A stretch of 64,000 bases of DNA, from contig OU015566.1 of assembly GCA_907165135.1 (NCBI GenBank), positions 12,772,001 to 12,836,000 of the forward strand. Reading direction: 5' to 3'. Both the position numbers and the translations under genes were made by a program. This document shows positions 1 through 54,797 of the stretch, in pieces. The stretch is from Oikopleura dioica (lineage: Eukaryota > Animalia > Chordata). Positions within the stretch are counted from its first letter, which is position 1. Each line of letters starts with the position of its first letter. The notes beneath the pieces were generated by a model that saw nothing but the letters and a program-made list of their open reading frames with translations, was not told the DNA's origin and made no database searches.

Positions 1-443
1 TTGGCGAAAACGTTGGCGAAGTTCTTCTTGGGGAAGGAGCCGTCGCAGCCGTAGGTTCGGACGAAGGATCGGAGGGCAGATCCGAGCTGGCTGTTGAGCT
101 TGCAGAAGTTGTCCTGATCAAAGACGAGGACTTCGTCGGATTCTTCGGCAGAGGGGCAAGGGAAGGTAGTGTCGATCTTGGCGACATCGGCGAAGACCTT
201 GTCGACCCACTTCTGGGCTCGGGCGACGTTCTTGTCGGAGGTGGTGGTGTTGTTGTCGGCCAAGTCAAGGAGGGTTTCGGCGTGTCCTCGGAGCTTGTTG
301 ATTCGCCTGACGGGGCTAAAGAATTGATTTATTCCTTGTTCAAAATATTCAGTTTCTCTCTCTCTGTTGACTTTTCTTGCAATAACTTACTCCTTGTTTT
401 TGCCAGCAGCGGCGACGACGAAGAGGGTGGCGGCGAGCTTCAT
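1..443 (-). CDS. Small secreted 4-Cys module protein, paralog 1 (3' end runs off window); exons 443-391 and 315-<1
   Basis: Translates MKLAATLFVVAAAGKNKD|PVRRINKLRGHAETLLDLADNNTTTSDKNVARAQKWV...VFDQDNFCKLNSQLGSALRSFVRTYGC. Signal-peptide exon, GT-AG intron, homologous to ORF 1500..1892. Confidence 0.9.
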
Positions 444-1270
444 TTTTATATTTCAAGTTTTTATCTAACTTAATTTATTGAAGGTCTCTTCGTTCATTTT
501 ATACTGTTTTCGTATCCATCGTGCGCTTGGTGGTGCTGGTGCTAGGTCACTTCGTAAATGCAACCGTTGCATTTTCGACAGCTCCGGGCTAACTAACGCT
601 ACATGAGTTTTGCAATTCTTTTTTTAGTAGATCGTTAATGAGGCCAGTTTTATTTTAATTTTGAAAGACAAAAAATCAAAAATATACAATTCTGATTCTT
701 CAAGTCTTCATGAAAATGCCTTGATTGATAATTTAGAACCCTCGCGTCCACCATTGTTTCTTTCTAAATTTCCACGTGCTTCAAAAGATTCACTCGTGAA
801 AATAAGTCCGACAATCAAAAATTCAGATCCTACCGCTGCTATTAACGAATAAAAAAAGTGACAGCCGGTGATTTTTGAGGCTTTTTATAAGTATTTGATT
901 TTATCTCAGATTTATAATCGCCAGCTCAAAATTCATGGATAAAAACAAAAAAAAATGAAGCTTGCTACGGTCTTTTATCGCAGCTGTATTCGCTTAGAAA
1001 TAAGTTATTTCAAATAACGAAAGATAGCTTTCGTCAGAAATACGCTTGAAAATTAGATAATTTTTTAGCCCGGAAAAGCGGATCGCCAAGATGCTTTGCT
1101 CGAATTGCTGATTATCAAAATAAAAATAAATTCATCTATCGTGTTTATTATTTTTGATCAACTTTGTAAATGATCAAAACGCGGAAGCAAAGATGCCGTT
1201 CTTATAGTAAGAAGATATATTACTTCAAGAGGTTAAGCATGCGACTGCTCTGACCCGCAACTCCTGGCGC

Positions 1271-1314
1271 GCGCCACCTTGTGTCGCACCACCACCGCCA
1301 AAAATAGTATAAAT
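1271..1314 (+). promoter_or_regulatory. CTCF-like motif (GCGCCACCTTGTGT, 1271-1284) plus TATA (GTATAAAT, 1307-1314) upstream of paralog 2
   Basis: Reverse complement ACACAAGGTGGCGC matches the CTCF core CCASYAGRKGGCRS at 12/14. The same layout recurs at six other genes. Confidence 0.5.
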
Positions 1315-1376
1315 CTAAGAATCGGCGGCTGATAAATCATTGTAATTCAGATATTTGAATACCAACATCACCAAAA

Positions 1377-1892
1377 ATGAAACTCGCCGTTGCCGTCTTC
1401 GCCGTCGCCACTGCTGGCAAGAACAAGGAGTAAGTAGTCAACAACTAGAGATATTAAATATAAGCATTTATGCTTGAATGATATTATTGATCGTAAAATG
1501 TGCAAATATTCATCTCGACTTTTAGCCCCGCCAAGCGATTGGCTAAGCTCGAAGGACACGCCGCTACCCTCCTCGACTTGGCTGACAACAACACCACCAC
1601 CTCCGACAAGAACGTCGCCCGAGCCCAGAAGTGGGTCACCCGAGTCTTCGACCAGGCCAAGGATCTCGACACCACCTACCCATGCCCAGAAGCTGATGCT
1701 GACGCCGATGAAGTCCTCGTCTTCGACCAGGAAGACTTCTGCAAGCTCAACGGTCAGCTCGCCTCTGCTCTCCGATCCTACATCCGAGTCTTTGGCTGCC
1801 CCGAATCCTACCCCAAGAAGAACTTCCCCAACACCTTCGCCAAGCGAACCAACCGAATGCGAAACATCTTCGCCCGAATTGCCGACTGCTAA
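1377..1892 (+). CDS. Small secreted 4-Cys module protein, paralog 2; exons 1377-1429 and 1526-1892
   Basis: MKLAVAVFAVATAGKNKD|PAKRLAKLEGHAATLLDLADNNTT...FCKLNGQLASALRSYIRVFGC...IADC*. Canonical GT-AG intron; AATAAA after the stop. Confidence 0.92.
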
Positions 1893-2034
1893 ACATTTTA
1901 ACCGTTCTGGAATAAATACGCATTCGTTTATACATAACCCCCTGTCTCTTCATTTTTCTTTTGACATTTTTGAAAATCAGAAAAATGAGCATTTTATTAT
2001 TTTATTTGGGAATTTAAAGGAAGCGGGAAGGTTT

Positions 2035-2486
2035 TTAACAGTCACCAGCGCGGGAGAAAATGTTCTTGACGCGATTTGTTCGTTTGGCGAAAACATTTTC
2101 AAAGTTCTTCTTTGGGTAGGTCTCCAGGCAGCCGAATTTGCGGACGTAGGATCGAAGTGCGCTCTGAACTTGGCCCGTGAGCTTGCAGTAGTTGTCCTGG
2201 TCGAAGACGAGGATATCACTGGCTTCATCGGCATCGACGGTCTCGCAGAGAGTGACGTTAATTTGGCCAGCTTGTTCAAGGAGTTTGTCAACCCATTGAA
2301 CAGCTCGAGCAACTCGAGCGTCAGAAGCAGTGGTGTTATTCTCCATCAGATCGAGAAGAGTCCTCAAGTGATTGCTAATCTTGTTCAATCGCTTTTCAGC
2401 GCTAGAAATGGCTGGATCATTGAGTCACTAAATCTGTCTTACTTTTGAGCGGAAGCGACGGCAACAAAAAAAGTGGTGAGTTTCAT
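2035..2486 (-). CDS. Small secreted 4-Cys module protein, paralog 3; exons 2486-2443 and 2401-2035
   Basis: MKLTTFFVAVASAQN|AEKRLNKISNHLRTLLDLMENNTT...YCKLTGQVQSALRSYVRKFGC...AGDC*. Confidence 0.92.
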
Positions 2487-2804
2487 TTTCAAAGAAGATA
2501 AAAAATTTTTATGAGACAAAGCTTGATGCTGACCGTTTTTATACTGGCAATCATGACCAGATGCGCTAGAGGGAGACCAAAAGATTTTTGATTACAAGGA
2601 TAAACCTAACCACGAGCTATTCAAATTTCACAAATAGTTGCGGTATAATTTAACACCATCACCTCACGTTTTCATGCTTTTCTGAACAAAAACTGAATTT
2701 TTAAGTCTGAAAGTCAGCATTTTTAAACGTTTTTAAACGTTTTTATTAAAAATTTTTATTGAAAAATAGTAAAGTTAGTACAAAAGAAGTTTGAAATAAG
2801 AGTC

Positions 2805-3268
2805 TCAACAGTCGCCAGCGCGGGAGAAAATGTTCTTGACACGGTTCGTTCGCTTGGCAAAAACAGCTTCGAAGTTCTTCTTTGGGTAGGTCTCTTTGCA
2901 GCCGAAGGTGCGGACGTACGATCGAAGAGCGCTCTGCACTTGGCCAGTGAGTTTGCAAAAGCTCTCCTGGTCGAATACGAGGGCATCACCAGCTTCATCC
3001 ACAGCATCGACGGTTGCGCAGAGAGTCGCGTTGATTTGGCCAGCTTGGCCGAGGAGCTTGCTGACCCAGGCGTTTGCTCGGGCAACTCGAGCGTCAGAAG
3101 CAGTGGTGTTATTGTCCATCAAATCAAGGAGGGTGTCCATGTGGCCGCTGATCTTGTTCAGTCGCTTTTCAGCGCTAGAAATTTGCATTTAGAAATTTAT
3201 TCAACACCAGATCTATCTTACTTTTGAGCAGAAGCAGCGGCAACGAGAAGAGTAGTGGAGAACTTCAT
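2805..3268 (-). CDS. Small secreted 4-Cys module protein, paralog 4; exons 3268-3222 and 3174-2805
   Basis: MKFSTTLLVAAASAQN|AEKRLNKISGHMDTLLDLMDNNTT...FCKLTGQVQSALRSYVRTFGC...AGDC*. Confidence 0.92.
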
Positions 3269-3356
3269 TTTTCAAGAAAAAAAAGAGTTTTTTGGTCTCT
3301 AGTCGGATTATGTCTTGCTTGACAAAATTTGATGCTGGATTGACCACGTCTATCTG

Positions 3357-3395
3357 TTTTATACTGAGTTTATCAGCAGATGCACTAGGGGGCAC
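3357..3395 (-). promoter_or_regulatory. TATA (CAGTATAAAA on minus) plus CTCF-like motif (plus-strand GCACTAGGGGGCAC, 3382-3395) upstream of paralog 4
   Basis: 13/14 match to the CTCF core consensus, 16 nt from the TATA box. Confidence 0.5.
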
Positions 3396-4032
3396 TCACG
3401 TTAACTCTGTTTGTGGATGGATGTCCTTATCTACACTAGAATCGTGGTGAGCGAAAAAAGGGTGAAGGGGGAATAAAGCAATAATGATGAGCTTCCATTT
3501 TTAGGCCGGGTTCCGTCACCAAATCCTTCGAAATCCTTCGGATTTTCCATTTCAAACCTAATCCTACCGCAAAGAATTTTAAAACGGGCACATCGTTGCG
3601 GTATTATTAAATTCAGAATCGCGTAAGACATGTTTTCAGGCTGTTTAAAAGTCGTGTTTTTAGGATCGTTTCATATTTTTTATTAAATAAAAGAAGACAA
3701 TGTGAAATAAATAAGAACCGTGTTTTGCATGGCATATAATTAACATTCGTTTGGCTTGAAGAAAGACAAAAGTAGAAGGAAAGAAATTGTGAAAATAAAA
3801 AAGTTGAAAATTATTATCAGTCAGTGGCAATCAGTCACGGTAATCGAGGTTTTTTGCGTTTTTTTTTGTTCGTTTTATGGTCTTGGTTCTTGAAAATGCT
3901 GCTGATGATGATTGGGAGGAAATTTTGATAGTCTAGCAAAAATTATAGAACAAGCAATAAAAAAGATCGGTTGAAATGTTGAAAGCAGTGGAACTTTTTT
4001 GGCTTTTGTGTTTTTTGAGCTTTGTTTTAACT

Positions 4033-6073
4033 TTAGACGGAGGAGATTGTGGATCCGGAGCTGCCAGAATTGCCGAAAGAGACGATTGAGAAGCGCTCCA
4101 TGTCCATTGTTAGATCCACTAAAATTTTAATAATAAAAAAGGCTTCTTTTCAGTATTTGAGAAAGATCGATTTATGTGTCGTGGATGATTTATTGCTTAA
4201 AAATGACTTCGAAAATGATCGATGACCGGAAAAGAAATCGAAAAGCGGAGGCAGATTTTTGCGACACTATCAATTTAACTTTGGCTGGCTCATTCCAGGA
4301 CAAAATTGACTTACTATGCTCAAGATTACTGAGGCTTGGTTTTTTCTTGTGCTGCTTCTGAATCTTTGTTTCTCGCGAGCAGCCAAACGCGACTTTGAAT
4401 CTTTGGAAGCCAAGGGACCAGAATTCTGCGAATCCCAATAGTACGGAAATGCTCCCTAAAAAGAATTAAGGAAGAATCTCTTGATTAAAAAAACTAACCA
4501 ACTATAAACATGAACCAAAGGAAGATTGTCTTTTCGTATGCCCTAGAAATCCAACACTCTGTTGCTTGAGGACAAGGGTCTCCGATGCAAATGTACTTTA
4601 GCGGAACTTGGAAACCGAACAGGTAGTACTGTAGCCACAGAAAACCGCCTTCGATCGCGGTTCTTATCAGCACTTGAGAAAATTTAGAAATGTAATTCGT
4701 AAGTGTTTACGGTAAGCGCTAATTTGAGTGCTAAAATTGAAAGCATCAATTACCTTGCCACCAATATGCACGCGCGATGTCGGGATGATGCAGCGGCCTG
4801 TACTTTCCGGGAAACTCGGAAGATGGAAAAGGCTTCCGAGTTGAAGGCGATCTTTCAATGTAAGTAACGTACTTGTTGTTTTTCCCATCGTAGACTGGAT
4901 ATCCTGCATTGTCGTTGTCTGTAAAATACAGAGGCGGATCTCCAACGCCCAGATGCGCGTTTGGACCAGACCCGTTCGGCTGAATAAGCCTATCTTCCTC
5001 GTCTGGTTTCGTTTTCAACGGGGACATTGTATGGCGGGATATACTTCCGGGATCGGAAAAGTTCGACTTTGGCGCTCGACTTTTATGACCAGAGTGATTT
5101 GAGCCTGCGTGTTTTCGATTTCGGAGAGAGTTCATTACACGGTGCTTTTTCTTGTGCGCCCTTTTTGCTAGCTTTTCTTCCCTCTCCCTAAAATATTCTA
5201 GCGGCAAAAGAGAAAAGATTTGCTCACCTGATTTTAGTAAACTTTGCTTCATCTTTCTTCCTTTCGTTCCTCGTTATCAAGTTGGTAGCATAAGCAAGAA
5301 AGACAATCGGAGGAGTGGCAGTTATGATCACCATCGCAGACCAAAATCGCAAATGCGAAATCGGAGAAAATTTACTATAGCAGACCTTGAAGTCAGATTT
5401 TAGATTCAGAGTCCCGACGCGAAGAAATTTCAAACCTGATTGCAGCCAGGAGTATTCGTGTTGCAAACGAACTGATCTTGTTCATCTCCGTACACTTGAT
5501 CTCCCACCCTGGCTATCATCACCATTCGGAAGGCAAACATGACCATTATCCATCTACGATTCAAAGTTTAGTTGAAAATCAAAATGTGAAGAACATTTTT
5601 TGGGTACCAAATTAGCCTAGAATCCTTGACATTTGAAAAATTCTCACGGCAATAAGAATAAGGGCGTCGCCTCTCTACTTCGGTGAATATTTCGGGTTAG
5701 CTGTCCTGTTAAACGTGGTAAAACGAAAGTTATCTGTGTTGAAAATTACGATAACAGTGAGCAAATGAGAACGTCAGCAAAAATGAATCTATCATTGACA
5801 TGTTCAGGCACGGGCTCAGTGTTTGGGGCTAATCCCATGGGCAACAGATCCGCTTTTTATCTGCAGGATTAATCTTTTAATGCTGCTCCTGCTGATAGGA
5901 GAAAAATACTCGTTAAACCGAATGATAACGTTCGTAAAAAGGGTTCTATCTGAGGCTCTAAGTGAGCGATTTCTGCGCTCTGCGCTTTTTGATCTTTGAA
6001 CTTACAATTTGCCAGGAAAAGTGGAGATTTTCCTGCAATTCTCCAGTAGATTGTGCAGCACATGCCAGGCCAT
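4033..6073 (-). CDS. Connexin (gap-junction protein), about 7 exons
   Basis: Spliced translation MAWHVLHNLLENCRKISTFPGKLW...[35 protein letters not shown] (E1, 3 Cys) and YICIGDPCPQATECWISRAYEKTIFLWFM (E2, 3 Cys). These are the diagnostic connexin loops. Confidence 0.93.
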
Positions 6074-9000
6074 GTTTCTCTCTTTTCTTCTTGGCTTCTC
6101 TCGTCGCGTTTTCTCCTTCGCTCAAGTCATTTCCTCGTTGATCTTTTTTAACAAGCCACGGAAGCAAATTGTAGATCGTCGCGGAACAGAACTAAACTAT
6201 CTACTGTTACTCTATTATTCTGAGTCTAAAACAAGCAGATAACAAAACGGTTTATGTCACTAAATCGCTTCATTTGCGTTTCAGAACGTAAAACTTTCTT
6301 TACGCTCGTAAAATTATTCGTAAAACGGACGTTTTTCTACGTACGCTGTAGTTTTTTTTACTACAGATAAGATCCGTTCTGGCAGCTAGACGGACACTTG
6401 GTATATCCTCACTGTCAAAATTAGCGAAATTCTCGGAAAGCCTTACCGATTTTTGAAAGAAAAAATGTCTCTTTATCGCGAAAAGTGCTGAGAAAAAAAG
6501 TCTGGCAATTTACGATCTGCTTGGATAAGGATTGGCGCTTTCTAAGCTTTTGAATATATATTTTTCGAAAAGAGAGGGAGGCAGCTAATTTTCCAGCTGA
6601 TTTCATCGAGCGTCGATTCAAAAGCAAAAGCAAAACCACTGAACCCCTACTTGAGATCTACTTTAGGGTATTTTAAAAAGATAAAGATGTTTACTCTGTA
6701 ATTTTCTCAAGACTGACGTATGAGAAGTCAACTGTTAAAGCTTTTTATGATGAAAATTCTTGGAGGATAAAACATTTAGTAAAATATATTATCAGTAATT
6801 CAATTGATTATAAAAAAGCCATAATTATTAAAAGAAAATATTCCATAGATAATTTAATAAACGAATAAAATCTTGAATTTAGATTGAAAAGAAATCCCGC
6901 ATAATGCTAAAGGTAGTGAAAACTTATCTACTGTAATTCTAGCCGACTAACTTTGATGAAAACAACACCTGATCAAATTGAATTTAACTTTTTCCCTCGA
7001 AGGACCTCTTTTATCCAAAGTCGGGATATAAAATCTGTCTATGGTTCTTTAAGAAAATCAGTGAGACAATGAACACTTGCGTGAGAAACTGCAGAAGGTG
7101 AATAGTTCTGACCTAAGTTGGGTGATTAACCTCCTTCAAGTTTTACAACGGCGCTTTGCGGTGTCTTTATGAAAAAAATAAAATAACGACCAAAAGAAAT
7201 GTCAATTATATATTTCAATATTTGTTTGTTTATTTTGTCTCTCGCTCGAAAATGCTAGTTTTCTTCAGGTAATATATCTGTAACAAAGGCTTACCGTCTT
7301 GTTTGTGAGGCAATACTGTTCTCTGAAAAAATGGGAGACATTGAAAGTTGCCCTTGAAGCAATTTTTGGGTATGATTTCTGCGGCTAATCCCCTGCTGAG
7401 AATCCGCCGTAAAAGGTGTCGAAAGTAACACGGTCAAATTTACTCGCTGATTTATCGAATTAACGTACCTTAATATCACAAGTTCTAGTTTCTCTTCCAG
7501 GAAAAATAAAAGGAAAATTGAACTAAGTCCGTAACATAAAGGTTGTCAGAAACGACAAAACTGGCATTTTTGTGGATAGTATTCTCTGAACACGCTTTCC
7601 AGACAGATTTAGTCTGATGACCAAAATTTTTAATTGAGAAAAAAAATAGCCGGATCGATTTTCTAGCAATAAATTTCTCTCTAACCTTAGCTTGAAGTTT
7701 CGCTGCAGCGAGATACGTGTTTCTTCAGTAAGCGGGCTGGCCTCTTACTGTAACGGTTAGTAGCTGATGACAAGTTCTTGCCTCCTCACGGCCTTACACG
7801 GAAATACACGAATTTTATATTAAGGGTTGCTTGACAGCGCGCTAAGGGGCTTCGGGCTCACTGTCGACTTCTTGAATAAATTTAAATTTTCTTCTGGATT
7901 AAAGTATTCTCTCTGTGTGTGTATCAAAACGGCGGAGAAAAACAATAGAGATTATATTTTGGGCGTTTTTTGTTTAGAGCGCAAGAATAGAGCTCAATTG
8001 AGATTTTACTTTTTTTAACGAGGAAAAGGTATACTCTGCGGGTAGAGCCTGAGTTTAAAGAGTTAAACGCGAGATGGAGATGAATGAGCCTCTGACGGGC
8101 CCGACGACGATGACCGGTTAAGAAAACGTAAAGTGAGAACGCTTTGAGAGTGATCAATCTTCATTCCGCGTTTGATTGCTGACACGAGTTTTCGCACGGA
8201 GTTTGTTTATCAAAAACGCTGCAAGTAACTTTCAGGGTGCAAAAAGCAAAGGAGTGATTTATGCGTTGCTCACCTTATCATCACCTTGTTGAGGTTGATG
8301 GAGGACGGGAGAATAGCGAGGTCAAACTCTACGAAAAATTATTTTTCCCATGATTCCGCAGTTTTCCACCTGCGGAAGTGGCGGCATGCAATTCATTTTA
8401 AGGGTGTGACAAGTGAATGAATCCTGTCATTTGGGATTGGCGCGATAAATTGTCAGCCAATTTGCAAAACACAGAAATACAGAAAAAATCAACCGTGTGA
8501 AAATAAACTGAAATAAACTTACAATTAGCTAGACCCTTCTTCTTTAAAATGAAACTCTCTGTATTTTAGAAACTCGATATTATTTTTTCTTCCATTTTTG
8601 TTGTTTTCTCGACCCTTTGGGAAAAAAATTCTGGCACAGAGGTGCCCCCTTTTCCGCCCATAAACAAAGCAAATGCCGTAAAAAGTCATTGATGCCTGGA
8701 GTAATTACTCGCGTGGGGATTTCTTTGAACCTTTCGACAACTTGAAACCTTGACTCACTGGATAGTTTTGGCATGTTTCTCCACTTACCCTCGTTTTTCA
8801 AGCTTTTTTGCTGATCTCTGGAAGCTTTTTCCGCCTTTTGTGGTGATTTCTGACTCCGTAATCGGAAATCTGAGCGGGATGATGGCTCTAACGCGATATA
8901 TAATATTTCGCCAAGAAATTCGCGAAAATTGGACAATTGACGCCTTCAAAGGCTCAATTATTCTGGGCGCGCTTGAACAACTTTCGAATTTCACATCAAT

Positions 9001-9335
9001 TTGTGAATTTACAACCTGCTAAATTGGTACAGCTCGTTTTCGTGTGATAAACTTTCTATTCTAGCTCCACAGGTTCTTCTAGCAAGATTGATCGCCACTC
9101 CACTTTGCCACCTGTTCTCCCTAATTTAAGCTAAACAACTTGTATCCAATTTACGAGAAATTAAGCCCCTCCGTTGAATCGCTGATAAGGAGCTCCTGTT
9201 GGAGTTGGAGGGCGCTCACGTTAATTTCTGCTGATAAGGAGAACTATAAAACTCGGTGGGAGATTCTAAGCAGCATCAACTTCCAGTGAACCAACACAGG
9301 AAAAAAAATACAATAGCTCTTTTTAAAACTCGAAA

Positions 9336-9808
9336 ATGAAAGTCACCGCTCTCCTCGTCGCCGCTGCTTCTGCTCAAAAGTAAGTTTCTTCCTTGATTTC
9401 AGCAACCAACTTCGAACTATCACTAATCTTCATTCTAGCGCCGAAAAGCGATTGAACAAGATCAGCAGACATATGGACACTCTCCTCGATTTGATGGAAA
9501 ACAACACCACCGCTTCCGTCGCCAGAGTTGGCCGAGCAAACGCTTGGGTCACCAAGCTCCTCAGCCAGGCTGGCCAAATCAACGCCACCCTTTGCGCCAC
9601 AGTCGAATCCATCGACGAAGCCGGTGATGCCCTCGTTTTCGACCAGGAAAGCTACTGCAAGCTCACCGGACAAGTGCAAACTGCCCTTCGCTCCTACGTC
9701 CGCACCTTCGGCTGCCCCGAGACGTACCCAAAGAAGAACTTCGAAGCTGTTTTTGCCAAACGAACGAACCGCGTCAAGAACATTTTCTCCCGCGCTGGTG
9801 ACTGTTGA
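9336..9808 (+). CDS. Small secreted 4-Cys module protein, paralog 5; exons 9336-9379 and 9439-9808
   Basis: MKVTALLVAAASAQN|AEKRLNKISRHMDTLLDLMENNTT...YCKLTGQVQTALRSYVRTFGC...AGDC*. Very close to paralog 4. Confidence 0.92.
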
Positions 9809-47724: not shown

Positions 47725-48237
47725 CGAATACCTATCCTTCTACAAATCAACGAATGACAGGTTTGAAAATTTGCGATCATCGAAAATGTTACTCCAATTT
47801 TAGCGCACTCGAGAAAATTGTAGTTTCTGTTCTTCAGAAAAACCTTGTTTTGGAGAAAAACACATCCTGCCCGTGAGCCTTCCTCCATAAAGTTACACAC
47901 CTTGTTAATTGAACATCGCCATCTAGTAGGAACGAGTTTCAACCCTCCGTCAGACACATTAAACGATTAGATTTTTTACGAGAATAGCTGATCAGATCTG
48001 AAACATGAAGGTATATTTGAATGGAATATTATTCAGAAGAGACCTTTTTAATCTCTCTCCCACTATAGATGTAATTTTTTTAAGTTTTTATTATTTGAAT
48101 TTTTCTGTTTATAAAATTTTCAGTAAAACTTGTTCTCAAGTTTGATCTCAAACACCGCGGTCAGCGTTGACCTAGATTCGGGACTCTAATCAAGAACGAG
48201 CGAGGAGCGCCCTAGAATTATCCACTTAGAAGCGCAC

Positions 48238-48275
48238 CCGCCACCTAGTGCGGCCAAGTTTTCAAAGCATAAAAA
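48238..48275 (+). promoter_or_regulatory. CTCF-like motif (CCGCCACCTAGTGC, 48238-48251) plus TATA-like CATAAAAA upstream of the carbonic anhydrase
   Basis: Reverse complement GCACTAGGTGGCGG is a 13/14 match to the CTCF core. It lies 75 nt before the ATG. Confidence 0.5.
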
Positions 48276-48325
48276 GGAGAAATTTTCAGAAAATTTATCA
48301 GAATATCTGAAAGTAAACTCAGAAA

Positions 48326-49885
48326 ATGAAGGTTTGTCTTATCGATAAAAAAAGAGACTTTGAGACAACAAGATGTAATAAATACGAAATTTATTTCAGC
48401 TCTTCACGACAGTTTTGACTTCAATCCCTCTTTGCTCCTCCGTCGGTGTCTCTGTTGGCAACGAGAGAGCTGCTGGCAGCTCATGGGGTTACGACGGTAA
48501 AACTTAGATACAAAAATCCGATAAAAAATACCTTATTTTAGAGCAGGGAGACGATTGGGGCGATTCTGCTGAGACTTGTAATGGCAATCGACAGTCACCA
48601 ATCGACATTCCGAAGAATTACTCTTCCGCTGAATTCCAGCCATTTCAGTTGACCAATTTTGACGACGAGCAAAACTGGACCTTGTTTAACAACGGCCACT
48701 CGGTGCAAATGACTGCTTCCAATCTGTAAGGACTCACTTTCTTTATATTTTACTGACATTTTCATCTCCAGGAACATGAAATTGAACGGCGGTGCTCTTC
48801 CAGGCGAATATATTCTTGCCCAATTTCACTTTCACTGGGGATCAGCCGATCATGCCGGCTCGGAGCATACTCTTGAGGGAAAGCAGTATTTCTCCGAAGT
48901 CCACTTGGTTCATTTCAAGGCGGAATACGAAACAATCGGCAACTCTGTAAGCAAAGGCGACGGACTAGCCGTCCTTGGCTTTTTCATCGAAGAAGACCCT
49001 TATGCTGAGGTAAACTGAACAAAAAAGTCAACTTATTAACCATTAGGATACTCCGCTCGATAATTTCTTCCGCAACCTCGTTGGTGAAGCAGTTCAAAAT
49101 CCGTCCGAAACTTCTACTGTTCAATTTTCCATGACTGATATTCTTCCCTCCACTCTCGACAACTTTTACAGGTACCTCAATATTTTATAAAATATTTATA
49201 AACAAGAATCTTTTAGATACCTCGGAAGTTTAACCACCCCGACATGTAATGAAGCCGTCGTTTGGACAAATTTCAAAGAATCCCTAAAAATTTCTTCGAA
49301 GACAAGGGAATTCATGACTCAGTTCGCCAAGGTTCCTTATCTCCAAATTATATAAAGTCTGGTACTAACTTATTATGATGTTTAAATTTACAGAAATCAA
49401 GGATAACCATGGGGAGGATTTGGTCAAAAACTACCGAAATGTTCAACCACTCAATGGACGCGAAGTGACTTTCTATTCTTCACAAGTTGACCGACTCAAT
49501 CTTATCGAGTACCACTTTGAGGTAAGCAGTGGAGATACCAATCGTAACTTATCATTTATTTTCCAAGAGAATCGTCGAAGCTCTCCCAGACAGACCATGG
49601 TCCGATCGATACGAGCAACGACTAAACAAACAACTCAAGAAGGCTGAATCTGCGTTCACAGGAGTCAACTGCTACAAAGAAAATGGCTTTGGGTCTGATG
49701 ACTCTGCTGACGACGTCCAGGTCTTCGATGAGAGTGACTTCTGCAAGCTCAACGGCCAGGTCAACGCCGCGCTCAACAGCTGGGCCCGAAACAACGCTTG
49801 CGAAGGACGAGGCAAGGTCTACCGACAGATCATCCGAGCCAGTCGAAAGGTCCGAAACCTTTTCGACAGGAAAATGAGTTGTTAG
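48326..49885 (+). CDS. Secreted alpha-carbonic anhydrase fused to a C-terminal 4-Cys module
   Basis: MK|LFTTVL... signal, SWGY, QSPIDI, NNGHS, QFHFHWG..GSEH, EVHLVH, YLGSLTTPTCNEAVVW, NYRNVQPLNGR, then DRLNLIEYHFE|RIVEAL...VFDESDFCKLNGQVNAALNSWARNNAC...MSC*. Confidence 0.93.
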
Positions 49886-50174
49886 AGAAAGAATGGATTT
49901 CTTGATCTGTGCTTATATTTATCTGATAAGGAATACAATATAACCAAACCTGTTATCAAAAAATTGAGAAGCAAACTTGACATCTTCATTTTCTTCGACC
50001 TTCTTATCTTATCTTATATAATATTATATATATATAAGTTATATATAAGTTTTATAATATAAGTTATATTATATAACTGATAAACATATTGGTTAAATGT
50101 TAAAAGACAAGATTTGTGTATATTTTATCTTTATTGTTGGATAATAAGAGGGATCAGAAAATTCTTTTCTGGAG

Positions 50175-51196
50175 TTAGCAGCCCATCTTGTCGTTGTAGA
50201 AGTTTCGGACCTTTCGAGCGGCTCGGATGACCTGTCGGTAGACCTTGCCTCGTCCTTCGCAAGCGTTGTTTCGGGCCCAGCTGTTGAGGGCAGCGTTGAC
50301 TTGGCCGTTGAGCTTGCAGAAGTCACTTTCGTCGAAGACCTGGACGTCATCGGCGGAGTCGTCGGAGCCAAAGCCGTTGTCTTCGTAGCAGTTTTCGCCG
50401 TTGTCAGCGTCAACAACCTTGTTGAAGACTTTGTAGAATCGGTTGACGTATCGCTCGGCCCAGGAAGCGTCTTCTGGGAGAGATGCAGCAATTCTCTGAA
50501 ATCCCAGTTTTAGGGATTTTACTCACTGATTATTTTGTTACTTAGTAAGTAATACTTACACCGAAGTGGTACTCGATGATGTCAAGTCGATCAGCTTCAA
50601 CAAGCTCAAATTCGAAACCACCTTCAGTAAAGGCGTGATCCGAGGAAAAACTGACTGTCGCCTGCCCTCCAATCACAAATAGGTCATCGAATCCGTTGTT
50701 CGAAACATTGACAAGGTCAGGAGTCATTTTGCCGCCCTCTTTCTTCTTCTTGTCGGCATCACGTCTTCGTCGTCGTCCGTACAAACGGGGGCCGCAAAAG
50801 TTTCTCTCTTCCCCGTTGGCAATGACCTTCACGTAGTCATATTCGCAGTTGTCAGCATACTCAACGTTGAATCGATTCGCAGTGATGAAGAAACCGGGAA
50901 CTCCTCGGATATCGATGGTCCAGCTGCAATGAGTTCTGTCGGGATAGTTGCCAGCACCTGAGTCTGGAGACGAAAATGTTTGAAGCTCAGTGATGCGGCC
51001 GCCGCAATCGGTTGCGATCGGAACGCCGTTAGTGGTGGTTAGAGTTCTATACGTAATGGAAGTCGTAGTGGTTTCAGTAGTAGTAGTAGGATAATAGTCA
51101 GTAGTGTAATAAGAAGCAGATGCGCCGGCAATCAACGAAAAGAGCTAAAAATAAATTCCTATTAATTGTCTCGCGTCTCTATGGATAAACCTTCAT
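50175..51196 (-). CDS. Secreted protein: Tyr/Thr-rich linker + CUB domain + C-terminal 4-Cys module (copy 1)
   Basis: MK|LFSLIAGASA signal; DCGG...YPDRTHCSWTI...F.VE..NCEYDYVKV...FCG...VSFSSDHAFTEGGFEF (CUB); then DRLDIIEYHFG|RIAASL...FCKLNGQVNAALNSWARNNAC...MGC*. Confidence 0.9.
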
Positions 51197-51868
51197 TCTC
51201 TAGCTTTTTTCAGATATTCTGATAAATGATGAGCTGCTTCACGCGGTTTTGTACATTTTGATTTCCGTAATTGCTCCTAGGTGGCGGTGCACTTCCACCA
51301 AGAGGTTAAACGAAAGAGAAACACTGAGAGTGCTTAGGGCAATGTCTAGCCTAGATAATGCTTCCGTTTATGGTATCAACTCTATTCCGTCATTTTTGAT
51401 TCGATTAAATTGCTATATTAAACAAGTCGCCCTTTGACGATTTTCCGATGTTTTAAATCTTTCTTCAACACACATGTAACTCGTGGTAAGAAATCAGAAC
51501 AGATCAGACCGTCACCAAGTGGAACTTGAAAGTAATGACAGGTTGTCAAAATAGCAATGTCGATCCTTGCCAAAACGGACCCAGCCCTTCGTGGTACTCT
51601 GGGAGATTTCCTTCGTAAGCAAAATTCTTTGAATTTATGAAAGTGCCTTAGTAGGAATTCATTCGCATCGGTACGTGTGCAAAATAATGCGCTCAAGTTC
51701 CGCAAGTCCGCTGATCGCAGACTAACAAGACCGCGCCCTCGATGTTTTGTCAACATCAGGCTCAGGTAAAGTCTGAAAAGCGTGTTTTCGTGAGAAACAA
51801 GTTTCGAGTAAAGTTTTTTTTTATTTTCGCAAAAAAGAGATATGAAATCAGAAAATTCTTTTCTGGAG

Positions 51869-52915
51869 TTAGCAGCCCATCTTGTCGTTGTAGAAGTTTC
51901 GGACCTTTCGAGCGGCTCGGATGACCTGTCGGTGGACCTTGCCTCGTCCTTCGCAAGCGTTGTTTCGGGCCCAGCTGTTGAGGGCGGCGTTGACTTGGCC
52001 ATTGAGCTTGCAGAAGTTACTTTCATCGAAGACCTGGACGTCGTCGGCGGAGTCGTCAGAGCCGAAGCCATTTTCTTCGTAGCAGTTTTCGCCGTTGTCA
52101 GCGTCAACAACCTTGTTGAAGACTTTGTAGAATCGGTTGACGTATCGCTCGGCCCAGGAAGCGTCTTCTGGAAGAGCAGCGGCGATTCTCTGGAAGATTA
52201 TATAAGAATCATGACTTGTTCAGTGACTAGTTAGTCGATAAGTTACAGACGATTACTTACGCCAAAGTGGTATTCAATGATGTCGAGTCGATCAGCCTCA
52301 ACAAGGTCGAATTCGAAACCACGTTTAGTAACGGAATGATCCGTGGTGAAACTGACTGTTGCCTGGCCTCCTAGAACAAACATGTCCTCGAATCCTCCGT
52401 TCGAAGCGTTGACGAGGTCAGCAGTCCATTTACCGCCCTCTTTGGGCTTCTCGGTTTCGCGTCTACGGCGTCTGTAAGGATCGGGGCCGCAGAAGTTCCT
52501 CTCTTCTCCGTTGGCAATGACCTTCACGAAGTCATATTGGCAGTTGTAGATAGTATACTCAAGCTCGAATCGATTGGCCTTGATGAAGAATCCGGGAACT
52601 CCTCGGATATCGATGGTCCAGGTGCATTGAGCTCTGTTGGGATAGTAGCCATAACCTGTGTCTGGAGACGAAAAAGTTTGAAGCTCAGTGATGCGGCCGC
52701 CACAATCGGTAAAAGTTGGTTCACCGTTTGTCGTGGTTTCAGTACTATAGTAAGGAGCAGAGGTCCCGGTAGGGTAATACTCAGTGGTACTCTCAGTAGT
52801 GGGGTAATAATACTCAGTGCTGTAGGAATAAGAGTAGGCAGATGCGCCGGCAATCAAGGAAAAAAGCTAAAATATACTTATTTACTTTCTTATTTCTCTG
52901 TGAACATACCTTCAT
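51869..52915 (-). CDS. Secreted protein: Tyr/Thr-rich linker + CUB domain + C-terminal 4-Cys module (copy 2)
   Basis: ORF 52243-52857 (CUB) plus a terminal exon near-identical to that of copy 1. Same MK| first exon and EYHFG| intron. Confidence 0.9.
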
Positions 52916-53900
52916 TCTCTAACTTTGTCAGATATTCTGATAAATTTTGAGTTGCTTCATGCGATTTTGTACTTTCTGAGTTCGGCCATCGGTAGGTGGC
53001 GGTGCGCTTACAGCGAGAGGTTGACCGTAAAAGAATTGCTGAGAGTGCTAAGGGCAATGTTTTGACCGAGATTAATGCAAATGTCGAAGAAATATAGAGA
53101 ATCCTGTAGAAAATAAGGGTAAATTATTTATCAGGAATCCCGTTTTTTTTTCAAAATCTGCGTGAAAATTGTATTGAAAAGAATAACTTGACGTTTTTAT
53201 CGGGAGAAGTCACATTTATTGTGAATCCATGCTCGAATTTCGGGTTCATTGGACGGTCTTTTGAAAAAGAAAGATTTTTTTACTGATATTCCTGAGTAAT
53301 AATTGCTTTCCTTCAATTATAAAATGAAAGATTTACCGCCTATTTGACCACAAACATTATTCCACCAGACGCAAACGTGTCTCTTCAGGATTAAATTTGT
53401 CGTAACATGGTAGAGCGGGTCAACTTGAGCTAGCGACTACACGATGTTGCTGATAACTGCCAATTTCAGGAGTGCGGATTTAGATAGAGAGGCGAATTTG
53501 CATTCGCTTCAAAGCAGAAGCCCGGCCAAGCGAAAGTTAAAATAAATGACTGGTTGTTGAGATAGCGATGTCGATCTGCGTGGCACTCTTCCGTTTGTAG
53601 TATCAACTCCGTTCCGTCATATTAGATATAACCGTATTAAATTGTTAGATCAGACTTTACCCAAGTGGAAGTTTAAAGTAATGACTGGTTGTCAAGATAG
53701 CAGTTGCTATTTATTATCATTACAATGTCAATCTGCGTGGTACAAATTAAAAGTCCCTTCAGACTGAACTCATAAAAAATCCACTTGAATTTCTTTGATT
53801 GCGAAATTCCAAAATGAAATCGCAAATTCGGTATATTTTTTTACTTGGCTTTATTCGCAAGAAAGAGATATCATATAAGATCAGAAGACTCAGAAGACAG

Positions 53901-54306
53901 ATTGAGCTTGCAGAAGTTACTTTCATCGAAGACCTGAACGTCGTCAGCAGAGTCGTCGGAGCCGAAGCCATTTTCTTCGTAGCAGTTTTCGCCGTTGTCA
54001 GCGTCGACAGCCTTGTTGAAGACTTTGTAGAATCGGTTGACGTATCGCTCGGCCCAAGAAGCGTCTTCTGGGAGGGCAGCGGCGATTCGCTGAAAATAAT
54101 TTTAACAAAAATTACTCTTCTAAATCGATGAGTAATCGACTATAACTTACGCCAAAGTGGTATTCAATGATGTCAAGTCGATCAGCCTCAACGAGGTCGA
54201 ATTCGAAACCACTTCGAGTTATGGAACCATCAGTGGTGAAGCTGACAGTAGCTTGGCCTCCTTGGACGAAAAGGTCGTCGAAGCCGTCGTTGGAAACATT
54301 GACGAG
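53901..54306 (-). pseudogene. Doubly truncated third CUB-module copy
   Basis: Homology runs only from LVNVSNDGFDDLF to ...DESNFCKLN. It lacks the signal peptide, most of the CUB domain and the last two Cys. Confidence 0.8.
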
Positions 54307-54797
54307 CGAATACGTCATAAAATGCTTCAAAAAGAGGACAAGAGCCGTCTAAATTCATTCTTTAAAACATTTGGCTACGTAAAACGTGCCCTCCGCGTTT
54401 ACCTAAAACAACCTAAACAATTTGTTTCGCCTGGATTTCAGAGCCATGATAGCCCTTTTAACCACTAATCGCATGGCAGTGGCTATGAGACTACCGTAAA
54501 TAGGGGTCCGTTGCTTTGTCGTTGATCGTGAAAGAACCCAAAATGAAAATATTAGTGTTCGGCAGCAAGAAAAAGTGTGGCAAGAAAAGGAAATCATGCG
54601 GATTTATTGTAATAATATCATGTAAATGCGTGCACCTCTAATATACCACGTGCGCAATATGTTTTGGCAGCATAGTTATTAAACGTTTCTAAGATTAGAT
54701 GTGACCGCTCTTACTATCCATAGTCTTGCAAATGCAAGATAAAGACAACTATCGTGCGTGAAAGAAAAAAATCGAATTTTAAAGAGCATATTTTTAG

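What the first reader, a model, noticed from the sequence alone, without database searches (positions are those of the whole stretch)
48326..54306. One ~115-aa 4-Cys module is a free secreted protein at one end of the window and a C-terminal tag on a carbonic anhydrase and CUB proteins at the other
Seen in sequence: the C-termini of the alpha-CA and of both CUB proteins align end-to-end with the five stand-alone proteins at 1-9808. The matches are RLNLIEYHFERIVEAL vs RLNKISGHMDTLLDLM, DDVQVFDESDFCKLNGQVNAALNSWARNNAC vs GDALVFDQESFCKLTGQVQSALRSYVRTFGC, and RKVRNLFDRKMSC* vs NRVKNIFSRAGDC*. Four Cys are conserved, the last being the final residue. That makes nine copies in three architectures in 64 kb. 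Established knowledge: larvacean houses are built from secreted, lineage-specific oikosins, some with CUB and enzyme domains. Inference: the module is a helical assembly or targeting tag; free copies form or seed a scaffold and the tag recruits enzymes (CA for local pH or bicarbonate control) and CUB adhesins to it. I do not recognise it as a named Pfam domain.
Basis: partly seen in the sequence, partly recalled or inferred. Interest (0 to 1): 0.85.

Follow-up and report, generated by a model that had tools for sequence, protein, structure and literature searches.

The report
New four-helix module in larvacean house proteins
Oikopleura carries an undescribed ~115-residue secreted helical domain, either as a small protein on its own or fused to enzymes and adhesion domains (here a carbonic anhydrase and CUB proteins), and one published "orphan" house protein turns out to be built from it, so it is probably a building or docking block of the animal's filter house.

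Summary
The window is Oikopleura dioica OKI2018_I69 chr1. It holds five two-exon genes for signal peptide plus module (one runs off the window start). It also holds one alpha-carbonic anhydrase gene, two CUB genes and one truncated CUB fragment, all ending in the same module.

A profile of the free copies aligns end to end with a profile of the fused copies (hhalign 98.7%, E 3e-16). Pfam, PDB sequences and fold libraries give no significant match. AlphaFold2 predicts a four-helix bundle (pLDDT 85), in the free form and directly after CUB.

A profile search of 1.84 billion proteins found 56 clusters. Every named hit checked is O. dioica; the rest are unnamed marine sequences. The module sits N- or C-terminal to CUB, trypsin, M14 carboxypeptidase and EGF, or stands alone.

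Both published in-situ primers for the 15-kDa orphan house protein Oik38 match a transcript that encodes signal peptide plus module. The CUB oikosin Oik4 is a probable member.

The "docking tag and scaffold" function stays an inference. This scan had not noted the module on other DNA.

The parts
1..443 (-). Free gene F1: exon 1 at 391-443 (signal peptide), intron, exon 2 at 1-315 (module). The 3' end runs off the window start.
1377..1892 (+). Free gene F2: exons 1377-1429 and 1526-1892, 139 aa, signal peptide plus module.
2035..2486 (-). Free gene F3: exons 2443-2486 and 2035-2401, 136 aa. Identical to the annotated chr1.g3488 protein (P0005).
2805..3268 (-). Free gene F4: exons 3222-3268 and 2805-3174, 138 aa.
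9336..9808 (+). Free gene F5: exons 9336-9379 and 9439-9808, 137 aa. Identical to the annotated chr1.g3491 protein (P0001).
48326..49885 (+). Alpha-carbonic anhydrase-module gene with 8 exons and GT-AG introns throughout: 48326-331, 48400-496, 48542-725, 48772-49009, 49047-171, 49217-331, 49402-521, 49568-885. Product 400 aa. The module is encoded by 49489-49521 plus 49568-49882.
50175..51196 (-). CUB-module gene CUB1: exons 51191-196, 50560-51144 and 50175-50495. Product 303 aa, equal to the annotated product length. The module is encoded by 50560-50592 plus 50178-50495.
51869..52915 (-). CUB-module gene CUB2: exons 52910-915, 52261-52866 and 51869-52189. Product 310 aa, equal to the annotated product length.
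53901..54330 (-). Truncated CUB-module fragment: the last third of CUB, the conserved intron, and the first ~66 codons of the module exon. Annotated as chr1.g3508 (P0082, 147 aa).
48294..48310 (+). 17-mer TTTATCAGAATATCTGA, 16-32 nt upstream of the ATG. The same 17-mer sits at 51210-51226(-) and 52928-52944(-) before CUB1 and CUB2. It is a shared 5' element of the three fused genes.

Best explanation
The nine copies belong to one undescribed extracellular domain of about 115-120 residues. It is predicted to be a four-helix bundle with four conserved Cys, which probably form two disulfides. So far it is seen only in Oikopleura dioica and in unnamed marine sequences.

It behaves as a mobile end-module. 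It occurs alone after a signal peptide (the five free genes here, and the published house protein Oik38). It occurs C-terminal to CUB (CUB1 and CUB2 here, and Oik4-like proteins) or to an apparently active alpha-carbonic anhydrase (here). It occurs N-terminal to trypsin-like, M14-carboxypeptidase and other domains elsewhere.

The carbonic anhydrase gene and the CUB genes share one gene chassis: the same upstream 17-mer, the same first exon ATGAAG with its intron, the same start of the signal peptide, and the same module with the same phase-0 intron. Only the middle domain differs.

The most likely role is non-catalytic. The module would associate with the matrix or with other copies and so fix its passenger domain (enzyme or CUB) in the secreted house matrix. 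The free copies would be structural or adaptor components of the same network.

Shown here: the homology, the gene models, the predicted fold, the range of architectures, purifying selection, and Oik38 membership. Inferred: secretion, a house location for these particular genes, and the binding or assembly function.
For: Homology.

Not a known family: no Pfam match. No PDB sequence match (best E 0.17).

Fold: four helices, pLDDT 85, pTM 0.77 for the free form. The same four helices start two residues after the last CUB strand in P0077, with pLDDT about 90 and whole-model pTM 0.72.

Family and partners: 56 clusters at 50% identity. Pfam partners are CUB, trypsin, Peptidase_M14 with PhoPQ_related, EGF_CA, and a weak Sod_Cu match. 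Every named member checked is O. dioica, from at least 27 genes on chr1, chr2 and the PAR.

House link: both Oik38 primers from Table S3 of PMC3390340 match L002 exactly, 256 bp apart, inside an ORF encoding signal peptide plus module. Q95PQ3 (296 aa, module at 181-296) fits Oik4, which is 32 kDa with a CUB domain.

Gene models: CUB1 at 303 aa, CUB2 at 310 aa and the carbonic anhydrase at 400 aa equal the annotated product lengths and ends. The zinc-ligand motifs FHFHWG and EVHLVH align to human CA II.

Selection: dN/dS is 0.09-0.30 for all paralogue pairs.

Conservation: the free-gene array, with the same orientations and neighbours, is present in the Bergen lineage.

Shared chassis.
Against: None of the nine could be placed among the 80 published oikosins. 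The primer-derived peptides of Oik26 and Oik27 match none of the family proteins held, and no carbonic anhydrase is listed.

Partner enzymes such as trypsin, carboxypeptidase and carbonic anhydrase are also typical of digestive secretions.

The fold is a generic helical bundle and gives no functional clue. No binding partner is known.

No carbonic anhydrase-module fusion was returned from other data sets. The window's own fusion was not returned either, so the sensitivity of those searches for it is unknown.
Confidence: 0.6

Rival explanations
1. The family is a general secreted family that works mainly outside the house, for example in gut digestion or defence. Under this reading the window's genes are not house components, and Oik38 is one recruited member.
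For: Partner domains are classic digestive or defence enzymes: trypsin, M14 carboxypeptidase, carbonic anhydrase and a weak SOD match. None of the window's genes could be matched to a published oikosin.
Against: Oik38 was isolated from houses and has an oikoplastic in-situ pattern (PMC3390340, Fig. 5d legend). Published oikosins also carry trypsin (Oik24g), SOD (Oik13) and CUB (Oik4, Oik6) domains. The CUB-module architecture fits Oik4.
Confidence: 0.15
2. The module is a regulatory or inhibitory domain rather than an anchor. It would act like a pro-domain, or like the plant four-helix invertase and pectin-methylesterase inhibitors, and would control the attached or a partner enzyme.
For: In the trypsin and M14 fusions it sits N-terminal, where pro-regions usually lie (P0035, P0063, P0066). 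The plant inhibitors 1x8z and 2cj8, which I recall to be four-helix bundles with two disulfides, appear among the weak Foldseek rows.
Against: Those structural matches are at noise level (E about 1, TM below 0.3). The module is also fused to non-enzymatic CUB, lies C-terminal in the carbonic anhydrase, and is abundant as a free protein.
Confidence: 0.12
3. The module is a pH- or bicarbonate-sensitive assembly switch, analogous to the spidroin N-terminal domain. The fused carbonic anhydrase would supply the local trigger during house secretion or inflation.
For: Spidroin N-terminal domains recur among the top Foldseek rows (5iz2, 3lr6, 6r9d). From my own knowledge, carbonic anhydrase drives the pH gradient in spider silk glands. 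Here a carbonic anhydrase is fused to the module.
Against: Foldseek probabilities are 0.12-0.35 and TM is at most 0.36, which is not significant. Spidroin NT is, from memory, a five-helix bundle. Only one carbonic anhydrase fusion is known.
Confidence: 0.05
4. The free-versus-fused similarity is chance or a compositional effect, and only the three fused tails are truly related.
For: Pairwise identity between free and fused copies is only 24-28%.
Against: hhalign gives E 2.9e-16 end to end. The free-only HMM separates real tails (34-52 bits) from 2,800 shuffles (at most 11.6 bits). Bridging sequences such as P0022 and P0079 fill the gap. The predicted fold is the same in both contexts.
Confidence: 0.01

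Closest known systems
Oikosin 38 (Oik38), a 15-kDa house protein with no recognised domain (Hosp et al. 2012, PMC3390340)
   Same: It is a stand-alone protein of signal peptide plus this module. Both published probe primers match a transcript (L002) whose ORF aligns with the family, carries the four Cys, and is about 134 aa.
   Different: It belongs to another subfamily (the P0026/P0037 type). The window's free proteins do not carry its primer-encoded peptides and are separate paralogues. Oik38 was published as an orphan, with no mention of a shared domain.
Oikosin 4, the 32-kDa CUB-containing oikosin (PMC3390340, Table S5)
   Same: The architecture is signal peptide, Ser/Thr/Tyr-rich stretch, one CUB, then the module. 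Q95PQ3 and P0112 (296 aa) have this layout and the right mass.
   Different: The identity of Q95PQ3 with Oik4 is inferred from length, mass and accession age, not from a sequence labelled Oik4. CUB1 and CUB2 are paralogues: their close relative P0077 is 51% identical to P0112, the Bergen protein.
Mobile extracellular modules of matrix proteins (CUB, EGF and similar) and terminal docking domains such as dockerin in cellulosomes (general knowledge)
   Same: It is a small disulfide-bearing domain shuffled onto many catalytic and adhesive partners at chain ends, and it also occurs alone.
   Different: It is all-helical, has no sequence or significant fold relative, appears restricted to one lineage, and has no known binding partner.
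Matrix-embedded alpha-carbonic anhydrases such as molluscan nacrein (from my own knowledge)
   Same: A secreted alpha-carbonic anhydrase is joined to a non-catalytic matrix-type sequence in an extracellular structure.
   Different: Nacrein carries a repeat insertion, not a C-terminal helical domain. The larvacean house is a cellulose and glycoprotein structure, not a mineral.
Spidroin N-terminal domain and plant PMEI/invertase-inhibitor helical bundles
   Same: They are secreted helical-bundle domains that appear among the best, non-significant, Foldseek rows.
   Different: E is about 0.5-2 and TM is at most 0.36, so there is no evidence of relationship. Membership was tested and not met.

Membership tests
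Alpha-carbonic anhydrase (Pfam PF00194) | Profile match above the curated cut-off | tested here: met
   Exon 4 alone scores 89.9 bits against a cut-off of 27. The annotated 400-aa product carries PF00194.
Alpha-carbonic anhydrase (Pfam PF00194) | Zinc ligands (His94, His96, His119 of human CA II) and the Glu106/Glu117 network | tested here: met
   FHFHWG, GSEHT and EVHLVH align column for column with CA II residues 76-145. NNGHS (His64) and SLTTP (Thr199) are present by inspection of the model.
CUB domain (Pfam PF00431) | Profile match above the cut-off and a beta-sandwich fold | tested here: met
   CUB1 scores 46.1 bits and CUB2 40.7 bits against a cut-off of 21.4. AlphaFold2 of the paralogue P0077 gives a beta-sandwich at pLDDT 84-94, interrupted by a disordered polybasic loop.
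Oikosins (proteins of the Oikopleura house) | Recovered from houses by proteomics and/or expressed in oikoplastic epithelial fields | tested here: inconclusive
   Met for a family member: the Oik38 primers match a module-only transcript. Not shown for the nine window genes: there are no reads, no primer or mass match, and no carbonic anhydrase in the paper's text or held supplementary files.
Any Pfam-A family (for the module) | A profile match shared by family members | tested here: not met
   No families at E up to 1 for five window copies. Across 46 members no family is hit by more than 2 of them, and the best E is 0.002.
Any solved structure or known fold family (for the module) | A significant sequence or structure match | tested here: not met
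   PDB profile search best E 0.17. Foldseek against PDB best E 0.53. VIA-align best Z 7.8, below the tool's stated noise level for helical bundles. Hits in the AFDB clusters with E below 0.01 carry O. dioica-type accessions or are the query's own cluster. The ESM Atlas gives nothing.
Spidroin N-terminal domain / plant PMEI-type inhibitors | Structural superposition with TM above 0.5 or a significant E-value | tested here: not met
   TM 0.26-0.36 and E 0.8-2.

The most novel reading that the evidence does not exclude
The module is a self- and cross-associating docking unit. Free copies would polymerise or act as adaptors, and module-tagged enzymes (carbonic anhydrase, proteases, carboxypeptidase, SOD) and CUB proteins would plug into them. 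That would give larvaceans a lineage-specific, cohesin-dockerin-like system for placing catalytic activities at defined sites of an extracellular machine. The carbonic anhydrase would set local pH or bicarbonate during house assembly or inflation.
Probability: 0.15. Interest if true: 0.8.

Novelty: new variant of a known kind. Interest (0 to 1): 0.55.

Why it matters
About half of the 80 known house proteins are described as orphans with no domains (PMC3390340). This finding gives at least one of them (Oik38), and probably the CUB oikosin Oik4, a shared and definable domain. It ties them to at least 27 O. dioica genes and to many planktonic transcripts.

It also shows that enzymes, including an apparently active secreted carbonic anhydrase, carry the same module. 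This makes the idea of a common incorporation or docking principle for house components directly testable. It provides a profile for finding house-protein candidates in other larvaceans. Finally, it is a clear local example of one gene chassis (promoter element, first exon, signal peptide, terminal module) carrying different middle domains.

Tried and rejected

2. First carbonic anhydrase models. They needed a non-canonical exon 6/7 junction or an extra base. I rejected them once the in-frame canonical acceptor at 49400-49401 was seen. It gives 400 aa, the annotated length. A brute-force enumeration of exon chains timed out.

3. Recent gene conversion between the tail-to-tail CA and CUB1 terminal exons. 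Rejected: overall nucleotide identity is 79% and dS is 0.64. The conserved core is explained by purifying selection.

4. Known-domain searches. Pfam, PDB sequences, Foldseek against PDB, VIA-align wide, AFDB clusters, and the ESM Atlas by features and by shape gave no relatives outside the family.

5. Oikosin primers. The peptides encoded by the primers of Oik9, 11, 13, 15, 16, 20, 22, 26, 27, 31a, 37 and 39 match no family member. The single Oik12 match lies in a low-complexity Thr run. The other primer pairs were not typed in.

6. P0057. This repeat protein on a 1.66-Mb ENA contig (E 5e-7) matches only half the module and lacks the Cys pattern. I treated it as probably spurious.

7. DNA for P0026 and P0037 was not on record.

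8. A carbonic anhydrase-module fusion in other lineages. None appeared among the hits, and the Bergen loci fetched hold no carbonic anhydrase. This is not conclusive.

9. A literature search for a prior description of the domain, or for a carbonic anhydrase in the oikoplastic epithelium, found nothing.


Full report
WHERE THE WINDOW COMES FROM
Two of the small proteins encoded in the window are identical to annotated proteins of Oikopleura dioica OKI2018_I69 chromosome 1. F5 equals g3491 (P0001) and F3 equals g3488 (P0005). The fragment at 53.9-54.3 kb is annotated as g3508 (P0082). Its locus in GCA_907165135.1 lists neighbouring products of 310, 303 and 400 residues, with CUB, CUB and Carb_anhydrase Pfam hits.

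Yes. tblastn of the free copies against the window finds five free copies and four fused-type copies. Free-versus-fused E-values are 1e-8 to 5e-10.

I then built a profile from free-type sequences only: five from the window and seven relatives. I built a second profile from fused-type tails only: the CA, CUB1, CUB2 and eleven relatives. hhalign aligns the two over 112 columns, from the first helix to the last Cys, with probability 98.7% and E 2.9e-16. An HMM of the free set scores every fused tail at 34-52 bits, while 2,800 shuffled tails reach at most 11.6 bits. Sequences such as P0022 and P0079 bridge the two types. Four Cys are conserved.

Three corrections apply. The ninth copy is a truncated fragment. 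F1 runs off the window start. In the wider family the last Cys is often followed by a few residues or by further domains.

GENE MODELS
Each free gene has two exons. A 44-53-nt first exon encodes a hydrophobic N-terminus (for example MKVTALLVAAASA). A 41-96-nt GT-AG intron follows, then one exon with the whole module. Products are 136-139 aa.

CUB1 (303 aa) and CUB2 (310 aa) have three exons. Their lengths and ends equal the annotation.

The carbonic anhydrase gene has eight exons. My first models needed a non-canonical junction. The canonical acceptor at 49400-49401 restores the frame and gives 400 aa, the annotated length with the same stop. Exon 7 encodes, in one open frame, both the end of the CA domain (...NVQPLNGREVTFYSS) and the first helix of the module (DRLNLIEYHFE). 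So the fusion does not depend on any single splice.

Exon 4 alone scores 89.9 bits on PF00194. It aligns with human CA II across the zinc-ligand motifs, so the enzyme looks active.

I sent nothing from those places to any search tool afterwards.

THE FAMILY OUTSIDE THE WINDOW
A profile of 12 module sequences (A1) was searched against 1.84 billion representative proteins. It found 56 clusters at E up to 1e-3, of which 35 were at E up to 1e-10.

The module lies in three positions:
- At the C-terminus, after CUB in many proteins.
- At the N-terminus, just after a signal peptide. There it is followed by trypsin (P0035), Peptidase_M14 (P0063), Peptidase_M14 plus PhoPQ_related (P0066), a weak Cu/Zn-SOD match (P0038), or sequence with no Pfam match (P0018, P0024, P0043, P0045, P0049, P0055).
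- Alone. EGF_CA precedes it in P0044.

Every named member I checked is O. dioica. Together with the window genes these come from at least 27 genes on chr1, chr2 and the PAR. The rest come from unnamed ENA, JGI, Logan and MERC records of about 0.5-3 kb. No ascidian, vertebrate or other named taxon appeared.

IS IT A KNOWN DOMAIN?
No. Pfam gives nothing for the window copies at E up to 1. It gives nothing consistent across 46 members. A PDB profile search has a best E of 0.17.

PREDICTED STRUCTURE
AlphaFold2 with a 46-sequence alignment gives a four-helix bundle: helices 3-24, 29-47, 74-92 and 103-121, with a long acidic loop between helices 2 and 3. Mean pLDDT is 85 and pTM is 0.77.

In a full CUB-module protein (P0077) the same four helices start two residues after the last CUB strand, at pLDDT about 90. 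The whole-model pTM is 0.72. The Ser/Thr/Tyr-rich N-terminus and a polybasic loop inside CUB are disordered.

Fold searches return only family members or noise:
- Foldseek against PDB has a best E of 0.53.
- VIA-align has a best Z of 7.8, under the tool's stated noise level for helical bundles.
- In the AFDB clusters, the hits with E below 0.01 carry O. dioica-type accessions (E4X..., Q95PQ3), apart from the query's own cluster.
- The ESM Atlas gives nothing.

The disulfide pairing could not be read because model coordinates are not exposed. From the topology I infer C1-C3 and C2-C4.

LINK TO PUBLISHED HOUSE PROTEINS
Hosp et al. 2012 (PMC3390340) list 80 oikosins, about half without any domain. 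Their Table S3 gives the primers for the in-situ probes.

Translated, the two Oik38 primers give KDARYVS and VRRLKKV, which occur in family members P0037 and P0026. The forward primer matches one JGI contig exactly (L002), and the reverse primer matches the same contig exactly, giving a 256-bp amplicon. Both lie inside an ORF that reads signal peptide plus module, about 134 aa. This fits the 15 kDa given for Oik38. Oik38 was recovered from houses and has an epithelial in-situ pattern (Fig. 5d legend).

Oik4 is listed as 32 kDa with a CUB/cubilin match. The AFDB hit Q95PQ3, an old-style accession of 296 aa with the module at 181-296, and the Bergen protein P0112 (296 aa, CUB plus module) fit it. 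This identity is probable, not proven.

The window's own free proteins are not Oik26, Oik27 or Oik38 by primer test. No other oikosin has their mass. No carbonic anhydrase is mentioned in the paper or its held supplementary files.

EVOLUTION
The CA, CUB1 and CUB2 genes share four features:
- An exact 17-mer, TTTATCAGAATATCTGA, 16-32 nt before the ATG. It occurs three times in the window and nowhere else, against 0.03 expected.
- A first exon ATGAAG with a GT intron.
- The first residues MKLF.
- At the 3' end, the module with a phase-0 intron after EYHF[EG].

Homology at the 3' end starts inside the upstream exon, exactly at the domain boundary, not at the intron. The genes therefore look like one chassis with exchanged middle domains.

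The CA and CUB1 tails are 79% identical in DNA, with dS 0.64 and dN/dS 0.28. That is an old event under purifying selection, not a recent conversion. Free paralogues show dN/dS 0.09-0.30.

The Bergen-lineage scaffold has four free-type copies in the same orientations, between the same trypsin, connexin and Nup35 neighbours. So the array predates the split of these lineages.

MOST LIKELY FUNCTION
The evidence for a matrix role is as follows:
- The module is non-catalytic and always terminal, or stands alone.
- It is rigidly attached to its passenger in the model.
- It is fused to many unrelated extracellular domains.
- It makes up the whole of one house protein.

The best reading is therefore a matrix-association or assembly domain that fixes its passenger in the house, with the free proteins as structural or adaptor units.

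Helix 4 is strongly basic, with 7-9 Lys/Arg in the last 30 residues. The loop before helix 3 is acidic. Heparan-sulfate proteoglycans are needed for house inflation (PMC3390340). So binding to sulfated glycans, or charge-complementary self-association, are reasonable mechanisms. Both are inferences.

The rivals are a mainly digestive or defensive secreted family, a regulatory or inhibitory domain, and a pH-switch analogue of the spidroin NT domain. None is excluded by direct data. They are ranked in the Rival explanations section.

VERDICT
The mechanistic core, scaffold plus tag, is untested. Only the companion note on this same window (s1-360650) touches it.

Noticed in passing
window 48005-48010 versus 48326-48331: The public annotation starts the CA coding sequence at ATGAAA|GT at 48005, which implies a 389-nt first intron. 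The ATGAAG|GT at 48326 has the same upstream 17-mer and the same first-exon and intron layout as CUB1 and CUB2, so it is the likelier start. Both give Met-Lys, so the protein is unchanged.
   Followed up: partly
window about 50728-50781(-) and about 52430-52480(-); P0077 residues 122-139: The CUB domains carry an inserted, predicted-disordered polybasic loop (for example YGRRRRRDADKKKKEGGK, with RRRR or RKRR in relatives). It looks like a proprotein-convertase cleavage site inside the CUB sandwich.
   Followed up: no
window 53901-54680(-): The annotated gene g3508 (P0082, 147 aa) is a truncated duplicate. It has non-homologous N-terminal residues, the last third of a CUB, and two thirds of the module, and then runs into unrelated sequence. 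It is probably a pseudogene or a mis-called fragment.
   Followed up: partly
window 51278-51290(-), 52993-53005(-), and a one-base variant near 48236-48249(+): The motif GCACCGCCACCTA lies about 85 nt upstream of the CUB1 and CUB2 start codons, with GCACCCGCCACCTA before the CA. Its reverse complement resembles a CTCF-type site. The count is not significant on its own: 5 of 100 shuffles reach 2 matches.
   Followed up: partly
L004 10001-10414 versus window 9336-9808: The Bergen-lineage orthologue of the free gene is called as a single 414-nt exon. All five Okinawa copies have a 41-96-nt intron right after the signal-peptide exon. This is an intron presence/absence difference between O. dioica lineages.
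   Followed up: no
L002 16-381 and 630-1076: The JGI contig carrying the Oik38 transcript also carries an unrelated GC-rich ORF whose sequence (ending ...WHVEVY) I recognise by eye as the C-terminal part of a ferredoxin-NADP reductase. The contig is probably an assembly chimera. This does not affect the Oik38 ORF.
   Followed up: no
upstream of window position 1: The free-gene array continues beyond the window. P0010 (chr1.g3485, 130 aa) is a further free-type copy that is not identical to F1 or F2. Its annotated model lacks the first helix.
   Followed up: no
They were left out of all later searches.
   Followed up: no
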